Shown here piece after piece: positions 2,602-46,991 of a stretch of DNA of 64,000 nucleotides. The notes beneath the pieces are model-generated. The model ran no database searches. It was not told the DNA's origin and worked only from the letters and a program-made list of their open reading frames with translations. The position numbers were made by a program, and so were the translations under genes. How positions within the stretch are numbered: the stretch's first letter is position 1; each line of letters begins with the position of its first letter. Source of the DNA: Heteronotia binoei (taxonomy: Eukaryota); assembly GCF_032191835.1 (NCBI RefSeq), contig NC_083227.1, positions 116,870,001-116,934,000 on the forward strand. Reading direction: 5' to 3'.

Positions 2602-2779
2602 GAAATAATCCTGAAAAGAGCAGCTGATATAGCAGAAGCACTCTACAGCGTCCCTCGCAATCATAACCAGCTCCCAGCACTTGCCAACACATCAGTCCAT
2701 GCAGGAATGATGGGTGTGAATTCCTTTAGTGGTCAGCTAGCAGTCAATGTTTCAGAAGCCTCACAGGCAACCAATCAGG
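2602..2779 (+). CDS. EBF1: EBF1 coding exon, second HLH helix copy plus start of the Ser/Pro/Thr-rich region ([59 protein letters not shown]+G), 178 nt
   Basis: cttttctccag acceptor and G|gtaag donor. The peptide [20 protein letters not shown] is what I recognise as EBF1 rather than EBF2/3/4. Confidence 0.97.
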
Positions 2780-4105: not shown

Positions 4106-4285
4106 GTTTTACTCGCAACTCAAGCAGTGTGTCGCCTCATGGTTATGTGCCAAGCACTACCCCACAGCAGACAAACTATAATTCCGTCACGACAAGCATG
4201 AACGGCTATGGAAATGCTGGAATGTCTAATTTAGGTGGTTCTCCAACATTCTTGAATGGATCTGCAGCCAATTCTCCCTATGCCA
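4106..4285 (+). CDS. EBF1: EBF1 coding exon ([60 protein letters not shown]), phase 1-1, 180 nt
   Basis: ctgtttctgcaaaag acceptor and A|gtacg donor. The frame continues from the previous exon. Confidence 0.97.
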
Positions 4286-6399
4286 GTACGTACTCTGCAT
4301 GTTAGCTTCAGTGGCAGTTTGCATAGTGATCTGAATAGGCTGAGCTTTCATAAATCTAAGGAATAGACTTCTTTAAAAGCTTTACCATTGCTATCAGTTT
4401 ATTTTTATTATTATTTTCTAATGGAAGTAGACACTATTTTCTGTATCTCAGAAATATGTTCTTGAAATTTTAGTTATCACTGTTTATATATTTATTATGC
4501 TTGTAATTAGAAAAGCTTCAAGTAGCTTACTTGGGTTTGCTTCATGGGCCTGCCAAGGGCCTGCCAGGGGTCTTCCATATAGGACCTTTCTACCTTACAT
4601 GCTGCTATAGCATCAGATGTCCTAAATATAAGTCTGTTTTGTAATTGAGGGGACAGGTAAAATACCCCTTGCTTTTTGCTCTTAGCTTTGATAACATTGA
4701 AATCTGATCGTGGAATACAATGGGAATAAATACAAGATTTGCTCCCCAGGCACAAAAAATTGGGTTATCAACATATTGTTTCAGAAATAATTCCCCCATC
4801 ATATACAAGAATATAGGAAAAGGAGATTTCTACAAATTCCTATTTCCAGGATCATATGCCATGCAATTCCCAAAGGTCTCCTGATTTTTAGGAATGGCTT
4901 TTCAAGGGACACAGAAGCAATGGGAAAGGAAATGTGACAAAGCTTGCTCTATATTAGGCATGACCGCAGTGCTTTTTGAATGGTATTTTGGATTCCCTTG
5001 ACACATTGCAGCAGATGTAAGAATGCCATTTTTGATTGTGTGCACCTTGCACACAATCTAAAAAGTCTGTTGCAAGGAATTCTGGGATGTACAGGAAAGT
5101 GATCTATAGCCAGAAGTTTCTACTTTTAGTTTTAGCTATAGTTTTAATCAGCACTTAGGTGCTAACAGACATGATCGATGAGCCATGATGATGAAAAGCC
5201 TTTCAGTGGCCTGATGATGCTTTCACAACATATGAGCTGCTGCAACAGAACTTTTTTTCAACCTCAATGTTAGGAGTCCTGGGTCATATGAGGTTCCTTC
5301 CCACTGATTCTGGAAACTGAGGCAGTGCTGGTATGGGAAGAAGACACATTATAGACTCAACCTAAATGACCTAGAGCTTTGTTTCTCAGCCTGTGGGTCA
5401 GGATCCAGAAGTGGGTCATGAAGCCTCTGAAAGTAGGTTGCAGGCTAGTCCTCCCTAATGGTGGCTCCTACCCATTACATCTTTCTTTTTTCTTTTGTTT
5501 TAACCAATGTTCCACATTCTCATCTCCAATTCCTTCTTTGTCACAATAATGGGGAGAAAAGAAACCATTAGAAATCTAATAATATCACTGAAGTAGCTGA
5601 AAGAAGGAGGGCTGGTGGAGAGTAGATGGGAGCTGTTTGGCATGCCATGGAAAGGGGAGGATAGAAAGAGGCATCCGCATGCATGTGCTTTTTATTGGTT
5701 CTGCTCCTTTAGTAGCCCAACCTCTTGCCCAGGCCTCTGCGTTGTTTCACTGTCCTTTATTTGCAATGGAAGATGTACTGCACCAAGCTCCTTGCCACAA
5801 ACTTCTTCATTGTCACCTGTCATTTTCATATAGTTCCTCAACCCAGTGACTGCCTGAGTGTGCCTCCTCAAACCAGCTCCAGCAGAGGAAACATGTTGGG
5901 TTTATAGTGACCAAGCCAAAAAGTTACAAGGATAATCACAGTTATATAAACCAATATCAGTACAAAAAAGACTGATTAAAGGCACTACTACACAATTAGA
6001 ATTTTTCTTAAAATCAACTGATCTTTATGTAATTTTTTTTACAATATGCAACAAAGATTAAACATTTATATCATACATTTTGTCTCACTTATTATTTATA
6101 GTGGGACAGCTGCATCTTCTATGTGATGTTTGTTGGTTTCTCAAAAACATCTTGTTGAGCACAGTAGGAAATGGAAAGCTGGAATAGATGGATGCAAAGA
6201 TGATAATTTGCCTAGAGCACAAAAGCTTTGGGCCAGATTTTGATGGGTTACCATACAAAGTGAATTTGGGCATGTGGGTCACCATCCAAAAAAGCATGGG
6301 AACCACTGATCTGGAGGCTTCTGGCTAGGGAGAGAAAAAAAATTGTTAAAACTCTGTTTTGGGTTGATTAAACAAAAAAAAAGTTATTTCATTTGGAAG

Positions 6400-6720: not shown

Positions 6721-7608
6721 ATCACTAAGGTCAAATAAGAGAATCTCTCACCTAAAAACAGTGGGGGGGGGGTTTCAGTCAGCAGCAGTGTATGTGCCCA
6801 GCAGAGCCAATGCTACTATGGCATTGCCAAAAAAAAAAAAACCCAGGACAAAGATCAAATTGGGTAGGAGGCATTTCCTGGGGAACCACTGTTGTCAATC
6901 TCCAGGTGAAGGCTAGAGTGCTCTCCAGGTGGCAGAGATCAGTTCCCCTGGACAAAACAGCTGCTTAAATTAAGGTTGCCAGCCCCCAGGTGGGGCCTGG
7001 AGATCTCCTGCTTTTAAGATACTATCTGGCCTGCTTAGCGGGGAAGTGCTAAAGCCCTATGCCAACAATGTTACTCAAAGAATTTCCTGTCTCAGATCCT
7101 AATTATTTTTAAAAGCCTACTAATACATAATAGCCTTAGGTAAGTTGTAAAAACCCAGAAGCACCCAGTGAACAACACCCTGAAAAGCAACCTTCTGGAA
7201 ATAAAACTAAAAACCTCTTCTAACAGTACCCCCTAAACAGAAATCTTCAAGACCAACTGGCGTCCCCGTGAAAAAGCAACCTTGTAAGACTGAGAAACTT
7301 ACAATAACCTCTATTAACACAACTGGTGCAGTTGCAGTACAATAAATCTGCATAAAAACACAAGAATCACACACTACACAGCCAAACCTAGGACCCAGAA
7401 ACAGTCCAAGTTCAACAGGAAAATTTTAAAAACCTGTGAAACAACTATTGTTATCTAGGCTAACTGAAGGCCTCAGTCAAGCAAGCGGACCACACAAACA
7501 GGCACACAATCTGTGAAGGCACATAATCTGAGGCACACAGCAAAAAACATAAAACCAGAAGGACTACTGTCTCAAGCCTTTTAAGAAATTCCAAGTCAGG
7601 CACAAAAT

Positions 7609-8558
7609 TAGGGTTGTCAAGTCCGACCCCAGAAATATCTGGGGACTTTGGGGGTGGAGCCAGGAGACTTTGGGGGTGGAGCCAGGAGACACTGGGGTGG
7701 AGCTAGGGGGAGGGGGGAAACGGTGCTGGGGAGCATGGTGAGCCGCCCCGTCTTGGAGCGGGCGATGCCGCTGCACAGCTGCCGCCTCTTCTCTGCTCGC
7801 CGTGGCTGCTCCTCCGAGATGGGCTCAGCCTGATGGGCTCAGCCTCAGCTCCCATCTTGGAGGAGCAGCCACGGCAAGCGGAGAAGAGGCGGCAGCGGCG
7901 CGGCAGCCTCGCCCGCTCCGCCTCTGGGGTGGAATCGGAGGGGGGGGGGTGGAGGCAGGCTGGGGGTGTGGCGAGCCGTGAGTCCGGGTCCTAGAAGGGC
8001 CTGGATTCGCAGCTCGCCATGCTCCTGGCCTGCCTCCACCCTTCTCTTCTTTGGTTTTGCCTGCGCTGCTGCCGCCTCTTGGCTGCTCCTCCAAGATGGG
8101 CTCAGCCTCAGCTCCCATCTTGGAGGAGCAGCCACGGCGAGCGGAGAAGAGGCGGCAGCGGCGCGGTGGCCTCGCCCGCTCCGCCTCTGGGGTGGAATCA
8201 GAGGGGGGGGGTGGAGGCAGGCTGGGGGTGTGGCGAGCCGCGAGTCCGGGTCCTAGAAGGGCCTGGATTCGCAGCTCGCCATGCTCCTGGCCTGCCTCCA
8301 CCCTTCTTTTCTTTGGTTTTGCCTGCGCTGCTGCCGCCTCTTGGCTGCTCCTCCAAGATGGGCCCATCTCGGAGGAGCAACTGCGGTGGGCGGGGAGGGG
8401 GCGGCAGCGGCGCGGCGGCCTCATTCGCTCTGGAATGGGATGGCTCGCCATGCTCCCCGGTGCCGTTTCCCCCTCCCCCCTTCTGTTTTTTTGGGGAGCG
8501 GGGGAAGAGGGTGGAAATCCTGGGGTCCCCCGCCAGGGCGGGAGGGTTGGGAAGCCTA
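7609..8558 (+). mobile_element. Non-autonomous hAT element (950 bp) with GC/CpG-rich tandemly repeated interior
   Basis: TIRs tagggttgtcaa and ttgggaagccta. Perfect 8-bp TSD cacaaaat at 7601-7608 and 8559-8566. Confidence 0.88.
7835..8360. repeat. 262-bp GC-rich tandem repeat, about 2 copies plus flanking partial units, each with an internal inverted repeat
   Basis: Identical text recurs with period 262, for example atgctcctggcctgcc at 8019 and 8281. Confidence 0.9.
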
Positions 8559-9704
8559 CACAAAATGGAATTTAAAAAAAATCTCAACCTTATCAACAAC
8601 AAGGCAGAAACTGAGGCACAGGCCATGCACCAGCCTCAGGAGGCCAGGCCAGGCCCACACAGAGAAAGTACAACAGTCTAAGTTTTAAAATCTCTTTAAA
8701 GAAATAGCAAAGTCTAAACTATCACTGACCAGGCAGAGTCAGATTACATAAGATTTAACTTCAGAGTATATATTTTAAACAACAAACAGTGGAAATGATT
8801 ATCAGCTCCTCTCCAGGCTCCCCAACAAAGCAATTAAACCTTTTAAAAAATGCCTAGGCAAGGGTAACCTGACCCCCCCCCCCCAACCCACAGTAACCTC
8901 CCCTTGACAGCCTCCCATTTAACCCACTAGGCAAATTTTAAAAGACCTTAAGAGAAAAATATTTTTAAGCTTTGTCACGCAAACCAGGGGATGCCTTCTT
9001 CCTCTGGCCAGGAACAGGAGTAGTATATTTCTCCAGAGACATCCAAGGAAATCAGCAGCAGGGTAATCCAAAAGGCGGACAATAGTCAGTCAAGTCAAGA
9101 GCAGAGCAATGGCTGAACTAGCAAGCCAGCAGTCTCAGGCAGCCAAACCAAACTCAGGAAACCACCATGGGATCTGGCTCAGATCAGCGCTTTTATGCTC
9201 TCTGCTCTGGCCATGCACAGAAGATTTTCAAAATGTGAAAAATCCTATGACTGGCCAAAGAGTATGCCCCCCCCCCTCCGCTGACTGCTAGCAGCCCAGT
9301 CAGCTAACAAAGGAAAGCAATTTAGCTATACTGTGTAACTAAGGAAACATAAAGAAGCCATGATACATTACATACTAGCCTTGTTTTTAGCTATTGCTTT
9401 ATTTTAGAAGTCCGTTCCTTTGCTAATCCATTCCTGAGTATGTGTGAAATTATAAATATTATAATTTATAATTTATACATTTATAATTTATTCTAAAGCA
9501 TTTGTTCTTATTTGCAATCAAATAATAAACTTACAAGTAACATTGTTGCAATCCCTCCCCCCATTGCCCTGATTGAGTTCATCTTTGTTTTGCTACATTG
9601 ATAAAACAGTTGTTAACTTGTGATGGCTGAGTGATGACTGGTCTTTGTTCAAGCCTTGAAGAACATATTCAGAGTTTTCAGACCTCTAAATGGATTTTAA
9701 TTGT

Positions 9705-11437
9705 AGAGACAAACAAAAGATGAAAGATTTCCTTAAAATATGAAAGAAATATGAAAGAAATCAAGGGAATGTTTTGTGCAAAGATGGCCATGATAAAGGA
9801 CAAAAACAACAGGGACCTAACAGAAGCAGAAGAGATTAGGAAAAGGTGGCAAGAATACACAGAAGAATTATACAAGAAGGATCTCAATGTCCTTGACACC
9901 CATGGAAATGAAATCGTTGACCTTGAGCCAGACATCCTGGAGTGTGAAGTCAAATGGGCCTTAGAAAGCATTACTAACAACAAAGTGAGCGGAGGCGACA
10001 GTATCCCAGTTGAGCTATTCAAAGTCCTAAAAGACAATGCTGTTAAAGTGATGCACACATTATGTCAGCAAATTTGGAAAATGCAACAGTGGCCACAGGA
10101 TTGGAAAAGGTCAGTTCATATTCCAATCCCAAAGAAGGGTAACGCCAAGGAATGTTCAAACTATCGCACCATTGCACCCATTTCACATGCCAACAAGGTC
10201 ATGTTAAAGATCCTACAAGCTAGGCTTCAGCAGTATGTAGATAGGGAACTACCAGAAGTTCAAGCTGGGTTTTGGAGAGGTAGAGGAACTAGAGATCAAA
10301 TTGGCAACTTTCACTGGATTATGGCAAAAGTATGGGAGTATCAGAAAAACGTCTATTTTTGTTTCATTGACTACGCTAAAGCCTTTGATTGTGTGGATCA
10401 CAACAAATTGTGGCAAGTTCTTAAATAGATGGGAGTACCAGACCACCTCACATGTCTTTTGAGAAACCTGTATAAGGGTCAAGAAGCAACTGTCAGAACA
10501 GGATATGGAACAACTGATTGGTTTAGAATAGGAAAAGGATTTCGACAAGGATGTATATTGCCACCCTGCTTATTTAATTTATACGCAGAGTACATCATGC
10601 AGAATGCTGGCCTGGATGAAGCAGAAGCTGGAATTAAGATCGATGGGAAAAACATCAACAACCTCAGATATGCAGATGACACCACTCTAATGGCAGAAAG
10701 TGAGGAGGACCTAAAGAACCTCTTGTTGAGGGTAAAAGAGGAGAGCACAAAAGTAGGCTTGAAACTCAACATCAAAAAAACTAAGATCATGGCATCTGGC
10801 CCCATCACACCTTGGCAAATAGAAGGGGAAGACATGGAAGTAGTGACAGACTTCACATTTCTGAGATCCAAGATCACTGCAGATGGTGACTGTAGCCATC
10901 AAATTAAAAGTTGTTTGCTCCTTGGGAGGACAGCTATGGCGAACCTAGGCAGTATAATAAAAAGTAGAGACATCCTGCCAACAAAAGTCCGTATAGGCAA
11001 AGCTATGGTATTCCCAGTAGTAATGTATGGCTGTGAGAGTTGGACCATAAGGAAGGCCAAGCACAGAAGAATAAATGCTTTCGAGCTGTGGTGCTGGAGA
11101 AGAATCCTGAGAGTTCCTTGGACTACAAGATCCAATCAGTCTGTCCTAAGGGAAATCAACTCTGACTGTTCCCTGGAAGGTCAGATGCTGAAGCTGAAGC
11201 TCAAATACTTTGGCCACCAAATGAGAAGGGTTGCTGGAGAAGATCCTGATGCTGGGAAAGACAGAAGGCAAAAGAAGAAGGGGATGGCAAAAGATGAGAT
11301 GGCTGGACAGCATTACTGATGTAACTAACGAAGATTTGAGCAGACTTCGGAAGATGGAAGACAGGAGGGCTTGGCGTGACTTTATCCGTGGGGTCGCAAA
11401 GAGTCAGACTTGACTGTGCCACTGAACAACAACAACA
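9705..11437 (+). mobile_element. BovB (RTE clade) LINE, 5'-truncated, RT domain with one premature stop and 3' indels
   Basis: ORFs 9751..10428 and 10429..11319 encode an RTE-type RT (NYRTIAPISHANK, FIDYAKAFDCVDH, RYADD). BovB-type 3' end ggggtcgcaaagagtc followed by a (caa)n tail. The 5' boundary is approximate. Confidence 0.92.
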
Positions 11438-12470: not shown

Positions 12471-13669
12471 GTTTCACCTTGGAAGGTGCTCCTTGGTGGA
12501 TCTTGATGTCACATTAATGGGAAATAATATTCAGTCAGAAAATGTTTCAATCATGACCTGAGAATTAGAAAGGTGGCTTTCTTAATTAAATCAATAAACT
12601 AATTGCTGTATAGTAGCAATTCAATTTAGGTACTTTGATTGCTCTGCCTTAACAAGTGCTTGCAGATACTGAGTGACTTTAGACCAAGATCATATCTGTC
12701 GGTCTCTGAAACTTTGAAAGTTTAATTTCCATTAATTGATTTCCTCAGTGTTCACCAATATGTTATCAGATTCTCACACAAGAATTTCAAGAAGGTGATT
12801 TTTATCTACATAAATGCTAATAAAATAATAATCTAAAACTCTGCTGATTTGAATTTTCATCCCCTTCCATTTAATTATTCATAAGTCTCTTTCGAACATA
12901 ACCAGCTTCAAAACAACATGAAAAAATGAGCACTTGGGCCAGTTTAAGGGTCTACTTTTTATAAAGAAGCCAATAATTCTGGAGTAAGTTGAGTTATTTG
13001 ATACTATTTTAAGTAAAATAAGATGCTCTTACCCTAGATAATGAATACATCAGCTAAATACATTAATTATCTTTATACAATACAACAGCCTTTCAAAATC
13101 ACATAACTCATCTGCCACAGTCCATTTTTTAAAAACTTATTTGTAGTTTTAACCATACTAGTAAAAGTGGTAGCTGACAGTTATCAGGCTGGTTTTGATT
13201 GCTGTCTGTCACCATTGCTCTGATGCCTGGCAATATGAGCTAAACAGAAGACTCAACACACATTGATTCTATTGCTGGATTTTTCTCTCTTCCCCTCTTT
13301 CTTGATGTGATGCCTATGAGCTGGTGCATTATTGCTGTCTCCCCACTTTGTAAATTTCTCTCTCTCAAAAACGTTATGAACTGAAAATACTTTTTGAAGG
13401 CACAGTTGAAGCAATGAAGCAAATGACACATTTTTCTCTATTTGTTGTAGCCAGTAAAAATGGCTGGGGGAGGAGGAGGGAATCTTTCAGACTGACTATG
13501 CATGACTAATCCAGCAGTAAGTCCCACTTGGTAAAACAGACCTCACTCTCAAATGACTGTTCATAAGATTGCAACTTTAGTCATGCTAAATAGTAGATAA
13601 TGTAATGATTTTATATAATAGTATTATATTATATAATAGCAGATAATGTAATGAAGATCCTGTGAATTT

Positions 13670-17344: not shown

Positions 17345-17539
17345 TTGTGCCATCTAGCCCAACAATGGCCTCCTCCACTAGCCTCCCTTCTAACTGTAGC
17401 AGCTCCTCTGGAATCTTCTCCTTCTCACCAGCCAACATGGTCTCAGCGGTGAAGCAGAAGAGTGCTTTTGCCCCTGTTGTTAGACCGCAGACTTCTCCTC
17501 CCCCTACCTGTACCAGCACCAATGGGAATAGTCTGCAAG
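17345..17539 (+). CDS. EBF1: EBF1 coding exon ([65 protein letters not shown]), phase 1-1, 195 nt
   Basis: Long T/C tract plus tttag acceptor and G|gtaag donor. It overlaps track ORF 17347..17616. Confidence 0.97.
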
Positions 17540-17837
17540 GTAAGCCAATCAGGGCATGTCATTATTTTACAGCACCTTGTGTTCTTGTGTCTTGTTACAA
17601 GAGGGATAAACCTTGAAGGTCTACAGTGTGAAGGCCTATATTGTTCTCATGTTGCTGAAACTCATTATTCCCTTGCTTGGCAAAACATGCCTGCCTTATT
17701 GCACTGTCAAATTGAGATTCTGTGTCTTTAAAAGCACATTCTGAGTGTTTGCTTTAAAAGAACTGATATTGCTGCTTACTAATACCAGCCTCTCTCTTTT
17801 TTTTCCTTTCTTATTCCTTGTTGTTGTCTTTTATCAG

Positions 17838-17906
17838 ACCAGTCTTTTGTGGACTCTAGCAAGTACTCCACTGCAGGGTCTCTCCAGGGTCTGGCCTTCT
17901 CCTGAA
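17838..17906 (+). CDS. EBF1: Putative alternative cassette exon giving the C-terminus DQSFVDSSKYSTAGSLQGLAFS* (stop at 17903-17905)
   Basis: Branch-point-like TTACTAAT at 17776-17783, a long pyrimidine tract, ttatcag acceptor ending at 17837 and a|gtacgt donor at 17907. It is phase 1 and compatible with the upstream exon. The peptide resembles the EBF4-type C-terminus as I recall it. Confidence 0.78.
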
Positions 17907-19162
17907 GTACGTCAGTCAATATTCCCTTGCTTTTTTGCTTTTTCCTTTGTCATGTCCACATGTGCAAGGTCTTTACTAATAGCAGCAATGCTTGTGGGAC
18001 AGGACTCATCACAGAAAACAGGCCATATCAAAGTTGTTTAGCATGTGATAGCAAATTACACATGGCATATTCTCCTGTTGTGTAAGATTTCCTTTCTTTT
18101 AAGCTTGTATAACATCAGTTCCTAATGATTAATATACTGCATGTACACTAATTTATCTTGCAAACATGCAGTTTCCTTGAAAATATCTTCATCTGTTGGC
18201 AGTCTTCACCTTTGTGTCACTTTAGTGGATGCCTTCCCTGGTACTCCATTTCCTTTCCATAATTTACACACCAAGCAGTCACATGAATATGTTATCCTGC
18301 CATGTATGTGTCATGGGGCAACTTGCTGCCTTCAGTAGGCTCAGGTAAACTCATTTGATATCTAGAAAGGCAGATTGTTGTATTTGTACTATCTTGTTCT
18401 GTGATGTCACTCCACTCTTCCAATCTCATTAGAAGAATGTTTTGTTCCGATCGATTTGTGTTGTTGCAGCATTCCAAAAAGAACAAGGCAATCTCCCAAA
18501 AGAACCAGAGGTGCTAGACATGGTTCAGGGAGTGTTGAAGAAAATGGATTTAGACTCTTTCATCACACATAGTGAACCACTAGGGCTGAGGACTATTTAA
18601 TCCACCAACTAGGCAATGGATGCCTAATGCTTCATCTAAATTACAGTTGTATCTTTAATTATGTTACATTTAAGCAAGAGTACTTGGGAAATTTGAACAG
18701 TCGGTTGTGGATTCAGGAGGTCATCTGAGATATTCTATGGCGTGGTCAAACAGTAATTTTGCTTTGGCTGTGAGTGTATGACTGTGAGTGTATGACATGT
18801 GAGTGTATGACTAATAGTTCACAGTTGGATTCTCAGACATGTCATCAGTATGTGTTAAAGACTGCAGGTTAACACTTAAAACTTAATCTATATTATGGGA
18901 TCCATACGTACTTAAACTTTTTTTGGGGGGGCATGATCTGCCACAGAACATCATGCAATGAATTACCAGGCTTTATCTACATTCTGTGACCTGTTTGTTG
19001 TTGTTTAGCATTCCACTTCCTGACTTCTTTGTACTTCAGAGGTTCATGGTCAGGGCAGAAGTCCTGGGCAGGGCAGGGCAGAAATCTCCCATTGTCCTTT
19101 TTTGCTGGTCTTGATGCTCCCCCACATTATTAGACCTTTTTTAAAAAAACAAAAACAGTGAA

Positions 19163-33710: not shown

Positions 33711-33742
33711 CTATATCTGGCATGATCGTCCCCCCCATGTGA
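33711..33742 (+). CDS. EBF1: EBF1 last coding exon segment (AISGMIVPPM*)
   Basis: tctcttgcctattttaacag acceptor, phase 1. TGA at 33740-33742. The peptide is the canonical EBF1 C-terminus. Confidence 0.96.
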
Positions 33743-36700
33743 AAGAATTGCCTTGAAGAATTCTACTAATGAAGAAGGTTGGATTCTGCTTCTGAACAAA
33801 ATCAGACACAAGTCCCAGAGTGGAACTTTTAACTCAGGCCTTTTTCTTTTCTTTCTTTTTTTTTAAAGAGGAAGTTCACAATATTTGCAAAGTTTTTAAA
33901 TAAATACAGTTTAAAGCCTCACCACCATCCTTGCAATATAATACTGAAATTCATGAAGAATCTGGAGGTGCAAGGTGTTCATTCAAGCTGTCCAGCCCAA
34001 GTACTTGGGAGAAAGAATTATTTTGTGTCATGAAGAAAATCCATCCATGTTTCTCTCTCTTTTTTTTCTTTTTGTTTTTCCAGCCTTGATTTAACTCTGC
34101 TGCCATTTGTCTGTTACAAATCATACTGAGAGAAGGGGGCACTATCACAGATGGCCCTTTTATTTAATTAAAAAATATTTTTTAAAGCTGTGTGCAGAGA
34201 AGGCAAGTGGTAACACTTAAAATGAGCTTGTACGGAACAGAAGTAGAAGTGCCAGATAAGGGTGGTTGTTTTCTTTCCTTAGAAGAGTAAAGGGCCATGC
34301 CAGTTAAGGGTTGGCTCATGCGTGTTACTCATCCAGAGAAAGTTTGCTCATCTGACGTTTTGCATTCTTGGTATGTTTGTGTGGAGGTATATATATATTC
34401 ACACACACACACACATACACACACACCATTAATTAGAATTCCAAGTCTATTTTAGAGGCAGTAAGACTTTTTTGACCCTCTGTTTTTTAGAATATCGTAC
34501 TTAGGTGATTGTGTAAATAATGCAAGACAGAAAATTAGCAAAAGTGTAGCTAACGACATGCATATCCCAACTTTACCTTGAAAACCCAGTGCCTCTGGAT
34601 ATAATGCTGAAACTGCAGAATTAGATTAGCATGGCTCTCTATCTTTAGCTTATATCAAAACCTTTCCAAATGAGTGGCCTCCCTTACTCTCTTAAATGCA
34701 GTTTAACCCCAGTCTATGCATACAAATCTCTTTGGGATTTGATGCAACAGAACAAAGGCACAAATGTGAGCCACTTTTATACATTTTTCTTTGCATTTTC
34801 TCAGCCAGAATATAATCCCTAGCTTGTTTCTAGGGTTTTTTTTTCCCTTTGGGGGTCAAAAGGCAGAGACAGGATTCATCCTGCCAGTCCACAGACGGCC
34901 CAGAAGCACACAAACACATTGGTCGGTTTCAAGCTTCGATCGCTTTTGTATTCATGAACCCTTTCAGTTGGAAACATAATCTCTTAAATAAAAGGTAATG
35001 GCTTCTTCAACAACAAATATGAAAGAGAGTTGAAGAAGAGAGAAAAGTATAGGAAGGTTACAGGTCCCATCCTCACTTACAGGAATTTTGCTCCATTTTT
35101 TGGGAAACTATTTGTGACATATTTAGTCAAAGGTGCAGCAAACTTCAGAGGATGCATTACCCAATCTTTTGTCTTTGCCATTGCGTTTTGTACGTAGTTA
35201 TAAATAATGTAGATTTTGGGTGATTTTTTTTGGCCAAAGTTATTGTTATATTTATACATTATAATGTCTTAAGACAGTTTTTCAATCACACACATACACA
35301 CAAAAGAATTACTGCATATTTTGCAAAATGAGCTCACTACCTTTAAGATTGCACATGCTTGCAAATTGAATTAAAGAAAAAAAAGCTTTTTTTAAAAAAT
35401 GAAGGATTTTGTAAAATATCCATATAAATAATGTATTTATCTTTGGAATTTGTACATTGCTTTTCCCCCTGCAGCACCCTCTGTTTATTTTATTGTGTAT
35501 GTTTGCTATGTGAAAAGTGCTAATTCGTTTGGTCACTCACAGGTGTATTAGCTGTTTAAATGTGATTTTAATACAATTCATTTATAGGGTTTTTTAGTAA
35601 TTGTTTTCAACCATGCTTCCATTTTTGTTTAATTTCCACTCAAAAGCCATCGTCTATTTTTGTATTATTTGTAAGTTAAAAAGTTTTTTTCCCAATATAT
35701 GGCAAAAAGTAGCATATTATTCTTGTAGCATTTAGTTAAGTAGATTTTTTAAAAGTATCCTTTGCTTTTGAGGCTTATAAAAAAATCTAATGCTGTTTTA
35801 CTCTATTAATATGCATGGGATCTCTCCCCTTTGGAGTGACGCATTTTTGTGCATTAAATATGGGGAGAAACTTCATAGAAATCAATGAAAATACTTTCTT
35901 TCTTGTCTGCTTGTATATTTCTCTGTCTTTCACATAAATATAAACCAGCAGATTGGATGCCTTAACAATGCAAATCATATTCATTTCACTTGTACATTGT
36001 ACTGCGCACCAGAACTGTCAATCATCACTAACATTCTAAGGAAAAAAATGGAATTTGAAAAGCACAAACGAACTGTTTTGTTACCTTAAGACAATGTGAC
36101 TTTTTCTAGACAAGCAACAATGCTGCAACTGTGCATGCTTTCTGTATGAATTTTGCAATGAATTTCACTCAGATGTCACTGTGTGATCTTTTGGGAAAGG
36201 GAATGGGGTGGGGGAGGACAAAGAAGAGAAAAATTCCAAAAGGTTATTGCCCATGGAATGGTTAAGAACATATTTACACATAAAGAAACTGGAAAATATA
36301 AGGAATATCAATGTATTGCTACTCAATAGTCCATACATTTATTCTAATTCACATAGTGAGCAACAGCACTGCAATGTAATCAAATTTAAAGCCATATTTT
36401 GTCCAGTCATGCCCTTCACTGAATCCCATTCAGACTGATGCATCTGTTTAGATGCCCATGCAAAGTCATGTCCATATGTATCCCTTTCTTTGAACATCCA
36501 AAGATCCTTTGACAAAATGTAGAATTTGTTTCTATCTCCAGCTATTTATAGTGTGCTGATAAAAGGGAATCTATATTTAAAAAGCCCCCTCAGCCCCACA
36601 ACTTTTGTGTGATTATTACAGATGCCGCTCTTTACAGAATATGGCTTTAAGTGGAAATGATCATGTTTTAATCTTTACCAAGTGAAGCCCCACATTGGCT

Positions 36701-37120
36701 GGATTGTGTGAAGGATGCCTATTTCCTCTTCATTGTATCTGACTGCATCTAAAAAGAAAATCATCTCTGATTCTACTAATTTCTCACCTCCTTAACTAAA
36801 CCTTTTGGAATAGATACACACACACTGTACAGTCCTATTGTTAGAGAGAACTAACTACTGTAGAGATTGTTATAATTTTTTTGCAGAAACTCAAGCTGTA
36901 AAAACTTTTCAACTTTCACAATATTTAATTAAAGTTACTTCCTGTCTGTGAGTGCAGCTCCTGGCCGTGTATTTATTCATTTGACTACTGGGTCAACAGA
37001 CAATTAGAAATGCTGAGTGAAAGCCAGCAAGTGACCAGATAGAAATGCCTTCTTTTCTGTATTTTATGCTGCAAAACAAACCAGCAGAAAAAGGAGAATA
37101 AAACTACATTTATTGAACTC
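33743..37120 (+). other. EBF1: Probable long EBF1 3' UTR
   Basis: AU-rich and free of recognisable transposons in an otherwise TE-dense window. AATAAA at 33899, 34987 and 37097. The distal end is inferred. Confidence 0.6.
37097..37102 (+). terminator. Candidate distal polyadenylation signal (AATAAA)
   Basis: AATAAA near the end of the TE-free block, preceded by a U-rich tract. TE-like sequence resumes at about 37480. Confidence 0.5.
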
Positions 37121-46820: not shown

Positions 46821-46991
46821 NNNNNNNNNNNNNNNNNNNNNNNNNNNNNNNNNNNNNNNNNNNNNNNNNNNNNNNNNNNNNNNNNNNNNNNNNNNNNNNN
46901 NNNNNNNNNNNNNNNNNNNNNNNNNNNNNNNNNNNNNNNNNNNNNNNNNNNNNNNNNNNNNNNNNNNNNNNNNNNNNNNNNNNNNNNNNNN
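46821..46991. other. Assembly gap (171 N)
   Basis: Run of N in the sequence. Confidence 1.

What the first reader, a model, noticed from the sequence alone, without database searches (positions are those of the whole stretch)
17838..17906. Hidden stop-containing cassette exon gives EBF1 an alternative, EBF4-like C-terminus and should escape NMD
Seen: 298 nt after the 17539 donor there is a strong branch point, pyrimidine tract and AG, then an in-phase reading DQSFVDSSKYSTAGSLQGLAFS-stop. A GTACGT donor follows just 1 nt after the stop codon. Established: stops less than about 50 nt upstream of the last junction evade NMD. From memory, human EBF4 ends in a similar DQSFEDSDKF...LQGLAYS peptide. 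Inference: an ancestral alternative tail predating the COE paralogue duplications, switching the transactivation-domain end (IVPPM versus GLAFS) while keeping the same long 3' UTR. It may already be present in predicted isoforms of other species; I cannot check that here.
Basis: partly seen in the sequence, partly recalled or inferred. Interest (0 to 1): 0.75.

Follow-up and report, generated by a model that had tools for sequence, protein, structure and literature searches.

The report
Conserved alternative EBF1 tail exon
A 69-base exon in the last intron of this reptile's EBF1 gene is real, has been kept since before bony fishes and land vertebrates split, and replaces the protein's last 10 residues with a 22-residue EBF4-like tail, but public gene models for hundreds of species already list it, so it is not new.

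Summary
The window holds the 3' end of EBF1 (COE1). After exon 15 (ends 17539) come a 298-nt intron, a pyrimidine-rich acceptor, a 69-nt exon (17838-17906) reading DQSFVDSSKYSTAGSLQGLAFS-stop in phase, one more base, then a GTACGT donor.

It is not a chance ORF.
- Four fish loci have the same layout: AG, 69 nt, TGA, one base, GTAYGT, then the VPPM exon downstream.
- Their introns do not align with the window's.
- dN/dS between the window and fish is 0 to 0.17.

The tail is already annotated as "transcription factor COE1 isoform X.." in mammals, birds, turtles, snakes, lizards, amphibians and fishes. This includes the chicken record NP_001384588.1. The window's exons match the squamate/turtle isoform X1 exactly.

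One EBF2 locus and one EBF3a locus lack the exon.

NMD escape follows from the 50-55 nt rule and was not tested. I found no paper on this tail. This scan had not noted this exon before; it has noted a similar stop-bearing exon in NUTF2 in this genome.

Verdict: real and ancient, already known at annotation level, functionally uncharacterised.

The parts
2602..2779 (+). EBF1 exon (here called E13): end of the HLH region and start of the C-terminal domain
   Evidence: One search shows the splice sites. Its translation is identical to residues 399-457 of COE1 isoform X1 (P0374, P0170).
4106..4286 (+). EBF1 exon E14; its donor is GTACGT, the same hexamer as the cassette donor
   Evidence: Its translation is identical to P0374 residues 459-517. 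It is 74% identical in DNA to catfish L001 68-251.
17345..17539 (+). EBF1 exon E15, the last constitutive exon before the choice point; it ends in phase 1 with donor GTAAGC
   Evidence: It is 80% identical in DNA to fish loci.
17775..17837 (+). 3' splice region of the cassette: candidate branch points (A at 17782 and A at 17813), polypyrimidine tract, and AG at 17836-17837
   Evidence: The 48 nt before the AG are 88% pyrimidine, and the four fish loci show 79-98%. The AG is invariant in all 5 loci.
17838..17906 (+). Alternative 69-nt cassette exon. With the preceding G it encodes DQSFVDSSKYSTAGSLQGLAFS, then TGA (17903-17905) and 1 nt
   Evidence: The peptide is identical to the tail of RefSeq COE1 isoform X1 of squamates and turtles and of chicken NP_001384588.1.
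17907..17912 (+). 5' splice site GTACGT, one base after the stop codon
   Evidence: GTAYGT sits at the same position in all five loci. Alignability ends just after it.
33712..33744 (+). Coding part of the last exon (canonical tail AISGMIVPPM-stop). It becomes 3' UTR when the cassette is included
   Evidence: Equivalent VPPM exons lie 1.3-4 kb downstream of the cassette in L002, L006 and L007.
35213..36951 (+). Conserved blocks of the shared 3' UTR
   Evidence: 73-87% identical to L002 32691-36631.

Best explanation
The 69-nt stretch is a genuine, ancient alternative cassette exon of EBF1 (COE1).

- Skipped: exon 15 joins the last exon and the protein ends AISGMIVPPM.
- Included: the protein ends with 22 other residues (DQSFVDSSKYSTAGSLQGLAFS) and translation stops 1 nt before the cassette's donor. 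The former last coding exon and the long 3' UTR are then carried as untranslated sequence.

The stop lies far less than 50-55 nt upstream of the last exon junction. The exon-junction complex of that junction would therefore sit inside the reading frame and be cleared by the ribosome, so the included mRNA is expected to be stable and translated (inferred).

The tail is the EBF1 counterpart of the constitutive C-terminal exon of EBF4. The splice choice thus swaps the extreme end of the disordered transactivation domain between a 'VPPM-type' end (EBF1/2/3) and an 'LQGLA[FY]S-type' end (EBF4). My best guess is that the tail is a short linear motif that changes cofactor binding or activation strength. 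That guess is untested.
For: Shown:
- The anatomy is exact.
- Five loci (this window, catfish L001, a sturgeon-assembly contig L002, eel L006, the goodeid Characodon L007) all have AG | 69 nt | TGA + 1 nt | GTAYGT. Where the sequence reaches far enough, a VPPM exon follows downstream.
- The cassette is 87-92% identical to fish, against 80% for exon 15, and the introns do not align.
- All 5 differences from L002 are synonymous. dN/dS between the window and fish is 0-0.17. Invariant columns by codon position are 18, 22 and 12 of 22.
- No AATAAA or ATTAAA lies within 300 nt downstream in any locus.
- All 120 listed hits (of 889) carry a tail of this type: 22 residues in 119 and 21 in the beaver model. 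They are named COE1 isoforms in mammals, birds, turtles, a snake, amphibians and fishes.
- Both tail types are annotated within the same species, for example grey seal.
- Chicken NP_001384588.1 has the identical tail.
- The window's exons are identical to the squamate/turtle isoform X1.
- COE4 proteins end in DxxFEDSDKFH..LQGLAYS.

From the literature: EBF4 is reported to transactivate less than the other family members (PMC4312928).
Against: - No transcript evidence was obtained for this species.
- No cDNA contig was found that shows what follows the stop.
- NMD insensitivity is a rule-based inference.
- Nothing here shows that the two tails differ in activity.
- Most database isoforms are automatic predictions, which can be propagated by homology.
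Confidence: 0.9

Rival explanations
1. It is an alternative terminal exon with its own polyadenylation site, not a cassette. In that case the isoform would have a different, short 3' UTR.
For: In the crow EBF4 locus (L003) the homologous exon has no GT donor after its stop, and no VPPM exon was found within 10 kb, although that stretch contains gaps. So a terminal version of this exon does exist in a paralogue.
Against: In EBF1, GTAYGT directly follows the stop + 1 nt in all five loci, and conservation ends right after it. No poly(A) hexamer lies within 300 nt downstream in any of them.
Confidence: 0.06
2. It is a regulatory 'poison' exon. On this view its role is to end translation early or to destabilise the mRNA, and the peptide itself does not matter.
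For: It carries an in-frame stop. Its first 26 nt are invariant in five species, third codon positions included, which suggests constraint at the RNA level as well.
Against: The stop is 1 nt from the junction, the position least able to trigger EJC-dependent NMD. Substitutions are overwhelmingly synonymous. The 22-residue peptide is nearly constant from fishes to mammals and is shared with EBF4.
Confidence: 0.03
3. It is a chance open frame, or an annotation artefact copied from genome to genome by homology-based gene prediction.
For: Most supporting proteins are XP_ or automatic models. No reads were seen here.
Against: The DNA-level conservation does not depend on any annotation. It covers the splice sites and shows a codon-position pattern. 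An NP_ record exists for chicken.
Confidence: 0.01

Closest known systems
RefSeq 'transcription factor COE1 isoform X1' of squamates and turtles (P0374, e.g. XP_013914638.1, Lacerta agilis / Thamnophis sirtalis; P0170, e.g. XP_037762671.1, sea turtles) and chicken COE1 isoform 5, NP_001384588.1 (P0377)
   Same: The 22-residue tail is identical. The window's exons E13, E14, the 3' part of E15 and the cassette translate to exactly these proteins.
   Different: Nothing at the protein level. This is the same isoform in another genome. I could not check whether this species' own annotation lists it.
EBF4 / COE4 C-terminus (e.g. XP_017592862.1 crow, XP_021155890.1 pigeon, XP_045741481.3 elephant seal)
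   Same: The homologous exon sits in the same place and phase after the exon-15 homologue. The motif D-x-x-F-[VE]-D-S-x-K-[YF] ... LQGLA[FY]S-stop is shared. About 13 of 22-23 residues are identical.
   Different: - The EBF4 tail is 23 residues and appears to be the usual end of the protein.
- In the crow locus the exon has no donor after the stop and looks terminal.
- In EBF1 the exon is optional and internal.
Canonical EBF1/2/3 end, A-[IM]-[ST]-G-[ML]-[IV]-V-P-P-M
   Same: It is joined to the same phase-1 end of exon 15 and uses the same 3' UTR.
   Different: It is 10 residues, hydrophobic and proline-rich, with no similarity to the alternative tail.
Stop-bearing penultimate cassette exons that give an alternative C-terminus and fall under the 50-55 nt NMD rule. 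An analogous case in this genome is the NUTF2 tail exon, noted by this scan (s1-322570).
   Same: An internal exon with its own stop next to the last junction, ancient, and already present in automatic annotation.
   Different: A different gene and an unrelated peptide. That note is an unchecked AI note.

Membership tests
Vertebrate EBF1 (COE1) gene, 3' exons | Exon translations match COE1 orthologues in the right order and phase | tested here: met
   E13, E14, the 3' part of E15 and the cassette are 100% identical to P0374 and P0170 at consecutive positions 399-604. The exon-15 search returned COE1 proteins.
Alternative cassette exon | Functional-looking 3' and 5' splice sites, conserved across species | tested here: met
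   AG with a 79-98% pyrimidine tract and a GTAYGT donor in 5 of 5 loci.
Alternative cassette exon | Both the included and the skipped products exist in the same species | tested here: met
   Grey seal, song sparrow and others have models with both the alternative tail and the VPPM tail. These are gene models, not reads.
Alternative cassette exon | Junction reads for inclusion and for skipping in this species | not testable with these tools
No indexed RNA run holds the stretch.
Protein-coding exon under purifying selection | dN/dS well below 1, and variation concentrated at third codon positions | tested here: met
   dN/dS is 0-0.17 between the window and fish. Invariant columns by codon position are 18, 22 and 12 of 22. 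Only 66 nt and five sequences were used, so the numbers are rough.
NMD-insensitive stop (50-55 nt rule) | The stop codon lies less than about 50-55 nt upstream of the last exon-exon junction | tested here: met
   TGA is at 17903-17905 and the exon ends at 17906. This holds only if 17906 splices to 33712, which is inferred. The actual stability of the mRNA was not tested.
EBF4-type C-terminal tail | Motif D-x-x-F-[VE]-D-S-x-K-[YF] ... L-[QP]-G-L-A-[FY]-S at the very C-terminus, encoded by the exon after the exon-15 homologue | tested here: met
   EBF1 tails are tabulated and COE4 tails. A tblastn search with the EBF1 tail finds the crow EBF4 tail exon (52% identity, E = 0.004 within the locus).
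Tail exon ancestral to all four EBF paralogues | The exon, or a relic of it, is present in the EBF2 and EBF3 introns, or the phylogeny places EBF1 and EBF4 on opposite sides of the root | tested here: inconclusive
   No cassette-like frame was found in the electric-eel EBF3a locus L004 or in the kangaroo-rat EBF2 locus L005. That is one locus for each paralogue. No tree was built. Daburon et al. 2008 place EBF4 as sister to the rest, with poor support.

The most novel reading that the evidence does not exclude
The EBF1 cassette may be a regulated switch, not just an annotated variant. Two things point that way: its EBF4-type tail could give EBF1 a weaker or differently partnered activation domain in particular tissues, and the 26 invariant nucleotides at its 5' end, synonymous sites included, could be an embedded splicing-control element. 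If the exon predates the paralogue split, then EBF4 fixed the included form and EBF2/EBF3 lost it. That would be subfunctionalisation of an ancestral splice choice among duplicated genes, which no paper found in the held library describes.
Probability: 0.25. Interest if true: 0.5.

Novelty: already known. Interest (0 to 1): 0.3.

Why it matters
EBF1 is the B-cell and neuronal/adipocyte lineage factor, and work on it almost always uses the VPPM-ending form. This alternative end of its transactivation domain has been conserved for more than 400 million years, is shared with EBF4, and is strongly selected. It is listed in databases, but I found no paper on it in the held library. Experiments that express or delete 'EBF1' may therefore overlook one natural isoform.

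Tried and rejected
1. RNA reads. The look-up of sequencing runs listed three 2026 RNA-seq runs kept as raw reads and several partial holders. There is therefore no junction evidence.
2. cDNA contigs. I looked for contigs carrying tail proteins to see what follows the stop. P0016 and P0017 turned out to be genomic annotations. P0162, P0099 and P0050 are not on record. The turtle genes are too long to fetch, and the frog sample's file was too large to fetch.
3. Literature. Five searches, including the peptide strings themselves, found nothing on this tail. 'glafs' matched only long-s 'glass' in 18th-century scans. Daburon et al. 2008 (PMC2394523) do not discuss a C-terminal alternative exon.
4. 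Rbfox GCAUG motifs in the flanking introns are not consistently present.
5. EBF2 and EBF3 introns. No homologous frame was found in one locus of each.
6. Joined model. All searches used single exons by reference or database proteins.
7. Earlier notes. Two look-ups returned no note on EBF1.

Full report
**What is in the window.** The + strand carries the 3' end of an EBF1 (COE1) gene.
- Exons lie at 2602-2779, 4106-4286 and 17345-17539.
- The last coding exon starts at 33712. Joined to the final G of exon 15, it reads AISGMIVPPM-stop.
- 3' UTR blocks are conserved out to about 36951.
- The translated exons are identical to RefSeq 'COE1 isoform X1' of squamates (P0374) and sea turtles (P0170).
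- Earlier notes of this scan call the genome a gecko. I did not verify that. The exon identities fit a sauropsid but cannot tell squamate from turtle.

**The observation.** It is correct to the base.
- Exon 15 ends at 17539 with donor GTAAGC, followed by a 298-nt intron.
- The 48 nt before the acceptor are 88% pyrimidine. Two branch-point-like motifs are present (CTAAT with A at 17782, CTTAT with A at 17813). The AG is at 17836-17837.
- The 69-nt exon 17838-17906, read in the phase left by exon 15, gives DQSFVDSSKYSTAGSLQGLAFS and then TGA (17903-17905).
- One A follows, then GTACGT. Constitutive exon E14 uses the same donor hexamer.

**Is it more than chance?** A 22-codon open frame alone is not. 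Conservation settles it.

I searched with exon 15 alone, by reference. This was the only way to reach full-length relatives without joining exons. The search returned database proteins in which the exon-15 sequence is followed by exactly this tail.

Four of these, or their relatives, gave genomic loci: catfish L001, a contig of a sturgeon assembly L002, European eel L006 and the goodeid Characodon L007.
- The window aligns to L001 and L002 only in discrete blocks. Exon 15 is 80% identical and the cassette 87-92%. The cassette block begins 2-4 nt before the exon and ends 6 nt after it.
- All five loci share the same architecture: AG | 69 nt | TGA + 1 nt | GTAYGT.
- The upstream intron is short (134-637 nt). 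A VPPM-type last exon lies 1.3-15.8 kb downstream wherever the sequence reaches that far.
- All five differences between the window and L002 are synonymous. Nei-Gojobori dN/dS between the window and the four fish is 0 to 0.17. Invariant columns by codon position are 18, 22 and 12 of 22.

With 66 nt these numbers are rough, but the direction is clear: the peptide is under selection. The first 26 nt of the exon after its first two bases are invariant in all five species, synonymous sites included. This hints at additional RNA-level constraint, as is common in regulated alternative exons (an inference).

**Cassette or terminal exon?** I saw no transcript, so this is inferred. Three observations support an internal exon spliced to the normal last exon:
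- the donor is conserved at a fixed position one base after the stop;
- conservation stops right behind the donor;
- no AATAAA or ATTAAA lies within 300 nt downstream in any of the five loci.

The cassette-included mRNA would then carry 1 nt of the cassette, the 33 nt that otherwise encode the VPPM tail, and the shared 3' UTR.

**NMD.** With the stop 1 nt from the last exon junction, the established 50-55 nt rule predicts no EJC-dependent decay. The complex deposited about 20-24 nt upstream of the junction would lie inside the reading frame. This follows from coordinates plus established knowledge and was not tested.

**Already annotated.** A word search used the last 51 residues of the rhinoceros model P0012.
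- It gave 889 hits. All 120 listed carry a tail of this type: 22 residues in 119 of them and 21 in the beaver model.
- The sources name them 'transcription factor COE1 isoform X..'. They come from placentals (aye-aye, sea otter, bat, seal, gibbon, donkey, flying fox, beaver), birds, turtles, a snake, newts, and many ray-finned fishes including bichir-relative, gar, bowfin, sturgeon and paddlefish.
- Cluster look-ups add Lacerta/Thamnophis isoform X1 and chicken NP_001384588.1 'isoform 5', all with the window's exact tail.
- Both tail types are modelled within single species.

So the exon is not hidden. Five literature searches, including the peptide strings, found no paper that describes it. 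The COE evolution paper (PMC2394523) discusses other splice events only.

**Relation to EBF4.**
- A search with the last 45 residues of crow COE4-like (P0135) found 106 proteins. Most are named COE4 (a few are labelled COE1- or COE3-like by their sources). They come from birds, turtles, alligator, caecilians, marsupials, placentals and platypus.
- All but two partial matches end in a 22- or 23-residue tail such as DQSFEDSDKFHSPARGLQGLAYS or DPAFEDSDKFHAPARPLQGLAYS.
- About 13 positions match the EBF1 tail, and the exon sits in the same place and phase.
- In the crow locus the exon has no GT after its stop, and no VPPM exon lies within 10 kb, although that stretch has gaps. There it looks like a terminal exon.
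- In one EBF3a locus (electric eel, L004) and one EBF2 locus (kangaroo rat, L005), the intron between exon 15 and the VPPM exon holds nothing resembling the cassette.

The exon therefore predates the divergence of EBF1 from EBF4 and of ray-finned fishes from tetrapods. Whether it predates all four paralogues depends on a tree that I did not build and that the literature leaves poorly resolved.

**How it most likely works.**
- Shown: an optional, selected 22-residue C-terminus that replaces the 10-residue VPPM end.
- Inferred: the isoform is stable and translated, and it changes the extreme end of the disordered transactivation domain.
- Speculative: the tail is a short linear motif (acidic/aromatic SFVDS..KY, then LQGLAFS) that alters cofactor binding. 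EBF4, which always carries the related tail, is reported to transactivate less than its paralogues (PMC4312928).

**What could not be done.**
- N stretches in the window and in fetched loci were left as they are.

**Verdict.** The feature is an already annotated, ancient alternative exon whose function remains unstudied.

Noticed in passing
window 12581-12640: A conserved non-coding block inside the EBF1 intron between E14 and E15. It is 85% identical over 61 nt to catfish L001 733-791. It is AT-rich with TAATTA-type motifs and has stops in all frames. It is probably an enhancer or a splicing element.
   Followed up: partly
window 9724-11316 (+): Two long open frames (234 and 296 aa) that look like reverse transcriptase (YADD motif). 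This is probably a LINE insertion in the same intron. I did not check it against Pfam.
   Followed up: no
window about 7600-8700: A GC-rich stretch with internal repeats. The same peptide strings recur in several frames.
   Followed up: no
L003 29284-29355 (crow EBF4): The EBF4 homologue of the cassette has no GT donor after its stop, and no VPPM exon lies within 10 kb downstream, although that stretch has gaps. In bird EBF4 the exon seems to have become the terminal exon.
   Followed up: partly
database proteins P0381 (tenrec) and P0210 (beaver): These models carry deviant alternative tails: one looks frameshifted and one has 21 residues. Placentals generally have LPGLAFS where sauropsids and fishes have LQGLAFS.
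   Followed up: no
window 46821-46991: A run of 171 N (a gap or masked stretch). I left it as it is.
   Followed up: no
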